A stretch of DNA of 63,781 bases, filler included, from Pelomyxa schiedti (lineage: Eukaryota; Protista; Evosea), in NCBI GenBank assembly GCA_020536535.1. It is 12 parts of 12 records of this genome, joined end to end, with 100 filler letters (N's around TTAATTAATTAA, not from the genome) between each part and the next. Parts side by side here need not be neighbours in the genome. Positions count along the whole stretch, not along the records: positions 52,869 to 55,492 come from JAHLWZ010001938.1; 11 more parts are not named here. One strand, 5' to 3'. A program made the position numbers and the translations under genes. A model generated the notes under the pieces. It was not told where the DNA came from, did no database searches, and was given only the letters and a program-made list of their open reading frames with translations. Below are positions 52,769 to 55,592 of this stretch, one piece after another. How positions within the stretch are numbered: position 1 is the first letter of the stretch; each line of letters begins with the position of its first letter.

Positions 52769-53168
52769 NNNNNNNNNNNNNNNNNNNNNNNNNNNNNNNN
52801 NNNNNNNNNNNNTTAATTAATTAANNNNNNNNNNNNNNNNNNNNNNNNNNNNNNNNNNNNNNNNNNNNGGGTTTGGGTTTGGGGGTGTGTGTGTTGGGGG
52901 TTTTGCTGGACTCTCTGGTGACACGAGCGGGCTCTGACTCTCCCACGTTTGTTTTGGTTATGTTCTTTTTCAACTTATAATAATAATACCGTGGGTTTTT
53001 TGGTTGTGGGTGTTTCTGCAGTATCTATCACCTTCCGTTCTTTTTTTGTTTTGTTTTTTTTCCCGTGCAGATACAGGTGCATTTCATTGGCTACGAGCGC
53101 CGCGTTCAAGCTGCAGCAGCTGGCTGGAAGAGGAGGAGGGGGAGGAATCAACAACAGATATCAATACC

Positions 53169-53474
53169 GGACGTGACGACATTCAGTCAGTCCAAATTGG
53201 GTTTGTTGACGACAATCAGTCTCGACCCAGATTGGCCCCAGCCCACCAGTGACGACATTCAGTCAGGGTTGGGCTGGGTCATATATCGGCTGGTGGTGAC
53301 GACATTCTGTCAAACCAGTTTCTCAGTCTTCCGCGTTTCCGTGACGACATTTTGTCAGGACCGGATCACTGCCTCTCGAATCCCAGAACGTGTCACGACA
53401 TTTTGTGATGCTCTGGATTCGACTCCAGTCCAGTCAATAAAAGTTTGACGACATTTTGTCACGCTGGACTGGAG
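53169..53474 (+). ncRNA. Putative structured RNA (or ssDNA) element: array of 7 stem-loops with conserved TGAC-GACAWTYW-GTCA cap and variable lower stems
   Basis: Caps at 53174, 53207, 53250, 53297, 53342, 53393 and 53446. Each is flanked by its own complementary arms. Copy 6 has a TCAC/GTGA compensatory swap. G-T wobbles favour the + strand. The repeat and pairing are read directly; RNA status is inference. Confidence 0.6.
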
Positions 53475-54059
53475 AATTCCGTTCATTCCTCCCCCCCTCA
53501 CTCTCTCACTCTTGCTGGCTCTCTGACTCTCCGCTGACTTGGCTGTGACCTGCTTTGGCTGCGACTTGCTTTTCATTTCGTAAGAACACTCCCACTCCTC
53601 TCCAACACAGGAAACAGGTTGGAACAGGTGCTCGAGCAGCCGGCGCAGCAGGCAAGCCAGGAGGAACACTCCTGGGGGTCTCAAACCCCCAAGTAAGTGC
53701 CCATTCCCAATTAATTTCGACTCCACTGATTTCCCTTCACATACACGCGCACACATCTCTCTGGTGGACTTGAGGACCCCCCGACGGAACAAACACTCAG
53801 GTGAATTCAACTCCTCCACCAATAAACAACACTTACTTTTCCCCCAGAGAGGCTGATCATTTTTCTGGCTCTTCGCGGTTCTTGAGGCTCTTTACGTTCC
53901 GCGATGGTCTCTTGGGGTCTCTTCGGCTCTTCGGCTCTTTGGCAGTGCACCACACTCACACCCCCGTCTGTTGTATTTACCCCGTGTTTTTAAATAAAGC
54001 CACCCTTTTCTCTTGTAAAACACCGATTCTGGTTTTCTTTTTCTCAATTCCCAAGAACA

Positions 54060-55420
54060 CTACTTCATGATCATCTTCACTTGTTGAGAGAGCATGCTCG
54101 TTCTCTCTCTGATGATGTTGTCCTGTGGGAAGTTCTGAGTGGTTGGGGTGGAGGGACGAAAGAAACCAGAGCAATGTCCATGAGGCACTCTTTTGCAATT
54201 AAGCAGTCGGATCATCAAATGAAGTGGCTTCCTGGCATTTGCGTTCACTTTGCTCATCACGTGGAACCTTTCCTCAACCCAATAATCAAATACCCCAGAG
54301 CTTGCTTTCTTGGGGAGTTGCCGGTACCATCGCCACTTATCGTCAAGTGCACTCCTCAATGGTTTTGGGTTTCCTGTTCTCGCATGCCTGGATGAAGTGA
54401 AGGGATGTTGACATTGAGCCCAGTCCCGGCAGAATCCATTTCATTGACTGCATATACATGGTAAAAAGAGACAGATAGGTGATGTGTCAAGTACTTTTCC
54501 CAGAAGAGGGGCGAAATATTTCATGCCGCACACCTGGCATTGCAGTAAGAGAGAGAGCACAGCGACGAAGCTCATTCAAAGTCAAAGTCAAAGAGAGGTT
54601 GTTTTGTAGCCACTCAACCGCCTTGTCAACAGGTGCATTTTCCGGCAGCTTCTTTGGCTTGACATTGAAACACCAAAATGCAATGGCCGCCGGGTTTGTT
54701 GTCCACCCACATGTAATTCCCCCAACCAAGGATTTGACAAGGGCCAGGCTTCCACTGCACACATTGATAAAGTGGGAATCGCCGCGGCGAACTAAAGCCA
54801 CAAATGATTCTTCTTCTTCATAGGAAGCGCGTCGAAGCGGGTTGCCAAGCGGGTTTCCCAGCCACTGCGCAAGGTCACAACGTCAGGGGTGGATTTTGGT
54901 TGAGTACTCATGAACTGGTGAACAAAGTCATTCTCAACAATCTGTGTCACATTTTGTCACACCGATGCCCTCCTCCAAGGGCTTTGTCTGTTACGGATCA
55001 ACCTATGGTTTACTCACAACTGTTGGGGCAACCTGCAGTCTCTACCACTGTGGCAACTGCTTCAACATCCTCTTCACTTCTTTGCCCTCAAACCTTGGAA
55101 CTGTCTGCACCACAACAAGAACCAAGTAAAGTCAAAGTACACGGTAAAACCTCTTTGGCCAAATATTAATTACTCGTAGTAATTCATAATTAAATATCCA
55201 CTAGATTGTATCACAATCTTTGAGCATTCATTTCAGTTTGAAGAGTGTGCTCCTCAAGAAAGTCTTCTCAAACACAAATGGAGTGAGCTCAACTGTCATG
55301 AATTGCAGGAAGTTACATTTTGTTTGGTTCATCAAGAAGTTCGTGATATGCCTGAAAGAATCAAGCTTTTGCAAGAAATCATCAAATGCAAAAGTGTAAC
55401 TGCCATGGTTAACAAGGTAA
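54060..55420 (-). mobile_element. Decayed hAT-like (DUF659-type) transposase
   Basis: Fragments in the expected order across stops and frameshifts: GSYTFAFDDF..RHITNFLMN (first catalytic D region), WETRLATRFDAL, NPAAIAFWCFN, FDYWVEE..PLHLMIRLL..RERTSML (dimerisation-domain-like). Recognised by eye only. Confidence 0.5.
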
Positions 55421-55592
55421 GGTACTCTTAGTAAATGAATATGACTAAGTGATTCAGTCTCAGAAAACCACTGAGAGAGACTGTGAGACCAANNNNNNNN
55501 NNNNNNNNNNNNNNNNNNNNNNNNNNNNNNNNNNNNTTAATTAATTAANNNNNNNNNNNNNNNNNNNNNNNNNNNNNNNNNNNNNNNNNNNN

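What the first reader, a model, noticed from the sequence alone, without database searches (positions are those of the whole stretch)
53169..53474. Array of seven tiled stem-loops with a constant cap and seven different covarying stems: candidate new multi-aptamer RNA (or ssDNA) element
Seen: seven copies of a 4-bp stem plus 8-nt loop (TGAC-GACAWTYW-GTCA) recur at irregular 33-53 nt spacing. It looks CRISPR-like, but the unique spacers are not free sequence: each half pairs around its own cap. H1 GGAC/GTCC (53169-72/53190-93). H2 TTGGGTT/GACCCAG (53197-203/53224-30). H3 CCCAGCCCA/TGGGCTGGG (53237-45/53270-78). H4 GGCTGGT/ACCAGTT (53288-94/53314-20). H5 TCC/GGA, TCCG/CGGA and CAGT/ACTG (53324-53371). 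H6 CCAGA/TCTGG and TCGAAT/ATTCGA (53376-53422). H7 CTCCAGTCCAG/CTGGACTGGAG (53423-33/53464-74). Hairpins abut almost without gaps. In H6 the cap stem is TCAC/GTGA, a double compensatory change with the loop unchanged. Most copies have a 1-2 nt 5'-side bulge directly under the 4-bp stem. G-T pairs occur on the + strand. Established: bulge + short stem + fixed loop is the design of protein-binding hairpins (IRE, MS2 operator), and CsrB-type RNAs array such sites on variable stems. Inference: structure plus loop sequence, not primary repeat, is under selection. That points to a multivalent protein-binding RNA (sponge, 3'UTR control, packaging or localisation signal), a precursor processed into seven units, or ssDNA recognition sites. 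A + strand exon-like reading (after TGCAG at 53070) stops at the TGA inside H1, so a 3'UTR location is possible. I know of no described element with this motif.
Basis: partly seen in the sequence, partly recalled or inferred. Interest (0 to 1): 0.92.

Follow-up and report, generated by a model that had tools for sequence, protein, structure and literature searches.

The report
Seven-armed RNA wheel with identical tips
A 410-base stretch of an unidentified, probably eukaryotic genome is predicted to fold into a wheel of seven hairpins with different stems but nearly the same tip, most likely an undescribed RNA that binds several copies of one protein, although no relative or expression evidence could be found.

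Summary
Seven copies of a 16-nt cap (4-bp stem, 8-nt loop GACAWUYW) sit on seven unrelated stems 0-6 nt apart. Folding z is -7.8 on + and -4.4 on -. With caps fixed and spacers shuffled, z is -5.2 (0/300). Own-flank pairing is the best of 5040 permutations (16-nt flanks). G-U pairs number 13 on + and 4 on -. No Rfam family, paper or homologue was found; pattern hits in viral, metagenome and GTDB contigs were satellites, iterons or lone chance copies. Splice-like signals and three AATAAA, all on +, suggest a spliced eukaryotic transcript. Best reading (0.55): a multivalent protein-binding RNA acting like clustered IREs, MAT2A hairpins or coronavirus SL5, but failing their sequence tests.

The parts
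53114..53152 (+). 5' arm of the outer closing stem (purine-rich; core 53126-53152)
   Evidence: pair probabilities 0.7-1.0; duplex -51.1 kcal/mol, 0/2000 shuffles; inverted repeat I2
53153..53168 (+). 16-nt single-stranded linker into the multibranch loop
   Evidence: unpaired in MFE and centroid
53169..53193 (+). Hairpin H1; cap 53174-53189; 1-nt G bulge under the cap
53197..53230 (+). Hairpin H2; cap 53207-53222 (3-bp cap stem, one loop change)
53233..53281 (+). Hairpin H3; cap 53250-53265
53288..53320 (+). Hairpin H4; cap 53297-53312
53324..53371 (+). Hairpin H5; cap 53342-53357
53376..53422 (+). Hairpin H6; cap 53393-53408 with one compensated pair (G-C to C-G)
53423..53474 (+). Hairpin H7; cap 53446-53461; AATAAA at 53436-53441 in its 5' arm
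   Evidence: (I11)
53481..53525 (+). 3' arm of the outer closing stem (pyrimidine-rich)
53540..53691 (+). Second structured region (long hairpin 53540-53659 plus two small hairpins), no cap motif; uncertain whether part of the same RNA; no strand preference
   Evidence: z -2.4, 4/200 shuffles
53077..53610 (+). Candidate GT-AG intron that would contain the whole wheel (consensus match only)
   Evidence: donor 7/9 match at 53077; pyrimidine-rich acceptor at 53610; untested by reads
53693..53847 (+). Candidate GT-AG intron downstream (GTAAGT donor, branch-like site, pyrimidine tract)
   Evidence: untested by reads
53993..53998 (+). Candidate poly(A) signal ending the + strand unit
   Evidence: three AATAAA on +, none on -

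Best explanation
The stretch is transcribed on the + strand as part of a spliced RNA (pre-mRNA or long non-coding RNA) and folds into one ~410-nt domain: a long closing stem carries seven hairpins. Each stem only has to pair, so its sequence is free. Each tip (bulge, 4-bp stem, loop starting GACA-U) is read by one copy of the same protein. Seven tips on one scaffold give avid, cooperative binding, so the RNA senses or soaks up that protein. Binding most likely decides the fate of the host RNA, by controlling splicing of the intron around the domain, use of the AAUAAA in H7, or stability and export. Shown: motif, excess folding, own-flank pairing, closing stem, strand bias. Inferred: transcription, folding in the cell, a protein ligand, the regulatory output.
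For: z -7.8 for the array and -8.2 with the closing stem. The excess remains with caps fixed (z -5.2), and own-flank pairing is best of 5040 at 16-nt flanks. Stems share no sequence while 10 of the 16 cap positions are invariant in all seven. One compensated cap pair. G-U pairs 13 on + vs 4 on -. Splice-like and AATAAA signals on +. Precedents for clustered loop-defined hairpins read by one protein: five IREs in TFRC (PMC4931119), six MAT2A hairpins controlling intron detention and stability (PMC10578476).
Against: One locus only: no homologue in any collection. No ligand identified. Compensation inside the cap is a single event (71/500 shuffles). The H7 cap is only 33% formed in the prediction. 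The host gene is unresolved and the splice sites are consensus matches only.
Confidence: 0.55

Rival explanations
1. It is the cis-acting packaging, export or replication signal of a mobile element or virus-derived sequence. Its capsid, Gag-like or reverse-transcriptase protein (encoded elsewhere) recognises the repeated tips, as proposed for repetitive structural motifs of RNA viruses.
For: The layout (closing stem, multiway junction, repeated apical loops) matches coronavirus SL5 (PMC10927501, PMC8206606). A decayed, CpG-depleted, transposon-like ORF lies about 550 nt away. The cap region keeps its CpGs.
Against: No Gag, capsid or RT similarity in any of the main ORF pieces. No terminal repeats or target-site duplication seen. 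A primer-binding-site look-alike at 52917 is not preceded by a CA LTR end (read from the sequence). No paired caps in viral contigs (the two looser hits do not fold alike).
Confidence: 0.17
2. The tips are substrates, not just binding sites. A loop-specific nuclease or modifying enzyme acts on each tip, either releasing seven small RNAs from the precursor or marking the RNA as METTL16 marks the MAT2A hairpins.
For: A constant loop on interchangeable stems is also the design of enzyme substrates (MAT2A hp1-6). Hairpins abut with 0-6 nt linkers.
Against: The loop is not UACAGARAA. Stems are too short for Dicer-type precursors (own knowledge). The variable arms pair with each other, so they have no free guide sequence. 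No Rfam match.
Confidence: 0.13
3. It works as single-stranded DNA or as a cruciform: an array of hairpins recognised by a HUH-type nuclease, transposase or replication protein.
For: The DNA fold is also significant (z -6.0). A decayed transposase-like ORF is nearby. The cap is an inverted repeat with an 8-nt spacer.
Against: G-U/G-T pairs are strongly biased to one strand. With DNA parameters several caps refold into another register. No HUH/Rep gene in the piece. Double-stranded binding sites would not need unique paired flanks or the two-sided change in H6.
Confidence: 0.08
4. It has no function as a structure: tandem duplication of a short palindrome followed by template switching made the local inverted repeats, or the repeat is a protein-coding motif.
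For: Loop ends change in order along the array (CA, CA, CA, CT, TT, TT, TT), which fits serial duplication. Five of seven caps share a frame, and one + frame is open for 153 codons. The 5' closing arm falls inside the weak TMEM161-like match.
Against: Template switching does not keep an unpaired, asymmetric loop fixed while stems diverge completely. Synonymous third positions of the would-be codons are invariant, and H3 and H7 are in other frames. The 153-aa ORF has no family hit. Stems hold G-U pairs and bulges rather than perfect copies.
Confidence: 0.07

Closest known systems
Coronavirus SL5 / repetitive structural motifs (PMC10927501, PMC8206606)
   Same: Closing stem leading into a multiway junction whose arms carry a repeated apical loop; proposed multivalent protein recognition.
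   Different: SL5 is a four-way junction with 2-3 UUYYGU hexaloops in a viral 5' region. This is a predicted eight-way junction with seven 8-nt GACAWUYW loops in cellular-looking DNA with no viral gene.
TFRC 3'UTR cluster of five iron-responsive elements (PMC4931119)
   Same: Several bulge + short upper stem + fixed loop hairpins on variable lower stems.
   Different: IRE: bulged C, 5-bp upper stem, CAGWGH loop. Here: mostly G or U below a 4-bp stem and a different 8-nt loop, tiled without gaps inside a closing stem.
MAT2A 3'UTR hairpins hp1-6 read by METTL16 (PMC10578476)
   Same: Six or seven hairpins sharing one motif; possible link to splicing of a nearby intron.
   Different: Motif there is UACAGARAA. 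No SAM synthetase similarity was found in this piece.
CsrB/RsmZ-type sponge RNAs (own knowledge)
   Same: Many copies of one loop motif on variable stems that titrate a protein.
   Different: Bacterial, GGA loops, ending in an intrinsic terminator. Here: no GGA loop, no excess of promoter or terminator sites, no Rfam hit.
HIV-1 RRE / HTLV-1 RexRE (PMC12789967 for function; shape from own knowledge)
   Same: A large structured RNA element that binds a protein and controls export or processing; RexRE is also tied to polyadenylation.
   Different: No repeated identical caps there, and no retroviral gene or LTR here.
CRISPR arrays and TIGR arrays (own knowledge)
   Same: Short constant units alternating with unique sequence.
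   Different: Here the unique parts pair around their own constant unit, spacing varies 33-53 nt, and no Cas or Nop-domain gene was found in the piece.

Membership tests
Any Rfam 15 family | Covariance-model match at gathering score | tested here: not met
   Only hit is mir-308, 19.2 bits vs GA 60, E 1.1, outside the array
Iron-responsive element | CAGWGH loop with a bulged C five pairs below | tested here: not met
   Loop GACAWUYW on a 4-bp stem; definition from PMC4931119
MAT2A/METTL16 hairpins | UACAGARAA in each hairpin | tested here: not met
   Absent from all seven caps; definition from PMC10578476
Coronavirus SL5 repetitive structural motif | UUYYGU hexaloops in a viral RNA genome | tested here: not met
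   Different loop; no viral-family hit
CsrB/RsmZ sponge | GGA in apical loops; bacterial small RNA | tested here: not met
   No GGA in loops; no Rfam hit
CRISPR array | Constant repeat length with unpaired spacers of near-constant length | tested here: not met
   Spacers of 17-37 nt that pair around their own cap
CRISPR array | cas genes nearby | tested here: inconclusive
   None in the 2.6-kb piece, but the piece is short
hAT/MITE subterminal repeats or MITE | Terminal inverted repeats with target-site duplication; repeats with unpaired flanks | tested here: not met
   Outer inverted repeat frays with bulges and G-U pairs and shows no duplication; flanks pair
LTR-element packaging or export signal | Lies in an element with LTRs, primer-binding site and gag/pol, or is a many-copy non-autonomous partner | tested here: inconclusive
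   No gag/pol hit and no long direct repeat in the piece; copy number in the genome could not be tested
Multivalent protein-binding RNA (functional class) | Repeated loop motif on independently pairing stems of one strand | tested here: met
Multivalent protein-binding RNA (functional class) | Is transcribed | not testable with these tools
Multivalent protein-binding RNA (functional class) | A protein binds the loops | not testable with these tools
   Needs pull-down or CLIP

The most novel reading that the evidence does not exclude
A natural heptavalent RNA scaffold of a eukaryote: a single eight-way junction, possibly released from an intron as a stable RNA, that displays seven copies of an undescribed protein-binding tip to nucleate or titrate a multi-protein complex. 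It would define a new class of structured non-coding RNA together with a new RNA-protein recognition pair.
Probability: 0.3. Interest if true: 0.9.

Novelty: new variant of a known kind. Interest (0 to 1): 0.74.

Why it matters
Natural RNAs that array one loop on several interchangeable stems are few (IRE clusters, MAT2A hairpins, CsrB, viral packaging motifs), and each pointed to a specific protein and control circuit. This one has an unrecorded loop, seven copies, and a closed multiway layout larger than the precedents I checked. The seven natural variants already outline what the partner needs (bulge, 4-bp stem, GACA-U), so a pull-down with loop mutants is straightforward. A compact tip that works on any stem could also serve as a new tag for RNA imaging or tethering, as MS2 and PP7 hairpins do. 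All this depends on the region being transcribed, which is not shown.

Tried and rejected
Rfam, ARAGORN, promoter/terminator scan and TRF found nothing for the array. Two-cap pattern scans gave 0 hits in viral and GTDB contigs with strict patterns and 4 in metagenomes, which were minisatellite-like repeats in animal-looking contigs and plasmid iterons. A looser pattern gave 33 loci; none folds as strongly or carries a comparable array, and the three read in full are ordinary tandem repeats or iteron-like. The 46 single-cap viral hits are isolated copies. blastn against phages and plasmids found nothing significant. A covariance model of the unit finds only the seven copies in the piece. Protein context: no relative of any ORF piece searched; the single phmmer hit P0001 is a bacterial TPR-repeat protein and is taken as spurious. 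The hAT-like reading of the decayed - strand ORF is by eye only and no tool confirmed it. The TMEM161 match (E 6e-5, 22.3 bits, below the 27-bit cut-off) is a weak lead without Atlas support. Kissing-loop or guide partners of the loops inside the piece were no better than short chance duplexes. SECIS, box C/D, Sm site, hammerhead and telomerase template were rejected by inspection of motifs (own knowledge).

Full report
Scope and limits. I worked on piece 52869-55492 only. It did not name any place as human-like and told me to go on with other tools. I do not take the piece for human, but I had no way to test that. Candidate exons were searched one by one by reference; the joined spliced model and a read-through of the decayed ORF were left out.

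The observation. A search for the 16-nt cap with up to three mismatches gives exactly seven copies, all on +, against 0.13 expected. A covariance model built from them finds the same seven in the piece; the next hit scores 9.6 bits, E 0.1. The array folds at -132.9 kcal/mol on + (z -7.8) and -120.9 on - (z -4.4). Because the caps are partly self-complementary, I kept them in place and shuffled only the spacers: z stayed at -5.2, 0 of 300. To avoid choosing boundaries from the fold, I took fixed-length flanks and asked whether each left flank pairs best with its own right flank. The true assignment ranked 51st, 20th and 1st of 5040 for 8-, 12- and 16-nt flanks. The stems share no sequence with each other, while 10 of the 16 cap positions are invariant.

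H2 has a 3-bp cap stem. The H6 change is one compensated pair and is not significant by itself (71 of 500 shuffles). In H4-H7 the first loop bases can add G-U and A-U pairs, where H1-H3 have G.A and A.C, so the tip may be a short loop on an extended, partly non-canonical stem. The H7 cap is only about 33% formed in the full prediction. The loop ends change in order along the array (CA, CA, CA, CT, TT, TT, TT), which fits serial duplication followed by replacement of the stems (inference).

The seven hairpins are enclosed by a long stem, 53114-53152 with 53481-53525. Its duplex energy, -51.1 kcal/mol, beats 2000 composition-preserving shuffles of the arms and all 2346 other pairs of 60-nt windows in the piece. 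The element is therefore predicted as one ~410-nt domain with an eight-way junction (z -8.2). Confident pairs include 13 G-U on + against 4 on -, which points to the + strand and to RNA. A DNA fold is also significant (z -6.0) but changes the register of several caps. A second, weaker structured region follows at 53540-53691 (z -2.4). The rest of the piece folds no better than shuffles, apart from a marginal hairpin near the left edge.

Context. Between 52869 and 54100 the + strand has donor-like sites at 53077, 53693 and 53801, acceptor-like sites at 53070, 53610, 53847 and 53945, and AATAAA at 53436 (inside H7), 53821 and 53993. The - strand has a few splice-like sites too but no AATAAA. These are consensus matches, not proof. 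They allow the wheel to be an exon (53071-53692) or to lie in an intron (53077-53610). The + frame over 52998-53186 gives an ungapped Pfam TMEM161 match (E 6e-5, 22.3 bits, cut-off 27) that persists in sub-pieces, but it derives from T-rich sequence, downstream candidate exons give no such match, and the Atlas does not support it. I treat it as a weak lead. From about 54060 to the edge, the - strand holds a reading frame broken by stops and frameshifts and depleted of CpG (observed/expected 0.16-0.68). By eye it resembles a hAT transposase, but Pfam, PDB, phmmer over 1.84 billion proteins and two word searches did not confirm it.

Relatives. None were found. Strict two-cap patterns gave nothing in viral or GTDB contigs. 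Hits in metagenomes and with looser patterns were minisatellites, iterons or chance pairs, none with unique self-pairing flanks where read. Single-cap hits were isolated. These collections hold little eukaryotic genome sequence, so the blank says little about how widespread the element is. It does mean that covariation between species, the usual proof of an RNA structure, is missing; the internal evidence from seven paralogous units stands in for it.

How it most likely works. Free stems with a fixed tip mean that something reads the tip while the stems only present it. The simplest reader is a protein that binds each tip, with seven sites on one scaffold giving avidity and a threshold response (inference). 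Precedents are the five IREs of TFRC (PMC4931119), the six MAT2A hairpins that control intron detention and stability through METTL16 (PMC10578476), and coronavirus SL5 with its repeated apical loops (PMC10927501, PMC8206606). Given the splice-like sites on both sides and the AAUAAA in H7, the likeliest output is control of processing or fate of the host RNA, or titration of the protein. I put this at 0.55. Rivals are a packaging or export signal of a mobile or virus-derived element (0.17), enzyme-substrate tips or a processed precursor (0.13), an ssDNA recognition array (0.08) and no structural function (0.07).

Comparison and verdict. It works like clustered protein-binding hairpins but is not a member of any family I tested: no Rfam match, and it lacks the defining loops of IRE, MAT2A, SL5 and CsrB, and the spacer and gene features of CRISPR. 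No paper in the searched library mentions the motif in this role. I rate it a new variant of a known kind, with a 0.3 chance that it is a new class of scaffold RNA. Interest 0.74: the feature is statistically solid and unusual, but it rests on one locus with no expression data, no homologue and no known partner.

Noticed in passing
window 54063-55492, - strand: Reading frame broken by several stops and frameshifts, CpG-depleted; spacing of a few motifs resembles a hAT transposase by eye, but no tool confirmed it.
   Followed up: partly
window 52998-53186, + strand: Ungapped Pfam TMEM161 (PF10268) match below the cut-off (E 6e-5); it overlaps the 5' arm of the closing stem and H1, and may be a chance product of T-rich sequence.
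   Followed up: partly
window 53436-53441: AATAAA inside the 5' arm of hairpin H7; cleavage downstream of it would remove the 3' arm of the closing stem.
   Followed up: no
window 54937-54967, + strand: A degenerate eighth cap-like sequence (12 nt identical to H7; 9.6 bits, E 0.1) inside the decayed ORF; probably chance.
   Followed up: partly
window 52903-52943 and 53510-53532: Short direct similarity (12 nt exact plus a nearby 13-14 nt near-match) between upstream sequence and the 3' arm of the closing stem; could allow an alternative pairing or be low-complexity chance.
   Followed up: no
window 52917-52932: Looks like a tRNA primer-binding site (starts TGG) but is not preceded by a CA LTR end; untested against tRNAs.
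   Followed up: no
window 52942-52995: Isolated long hairpin upstream of the element (weak mir-308 model hit, E 1.1, not significant).
   Followed up: partly
window 53693 (+) and 53836 (-): GTAAGT donor-like sites face each other on opposite strands at the two ends of the same candidate intron.
   Followed up: no
L071 1-1290 (Cetobacterium MAG contig): Tandem array of about 24 non-coding 53-55 nt repeats with a palindromic core at a contig end; unrelated to the finding.
   Followed up: no
L003 330-420 and L072 7620-7740: Iteron-like 21-23 nt repeats (in L003 beside a plasmid rep-like gene) share the ACGACA start of the cap; coincidental.
   Followed up: partly
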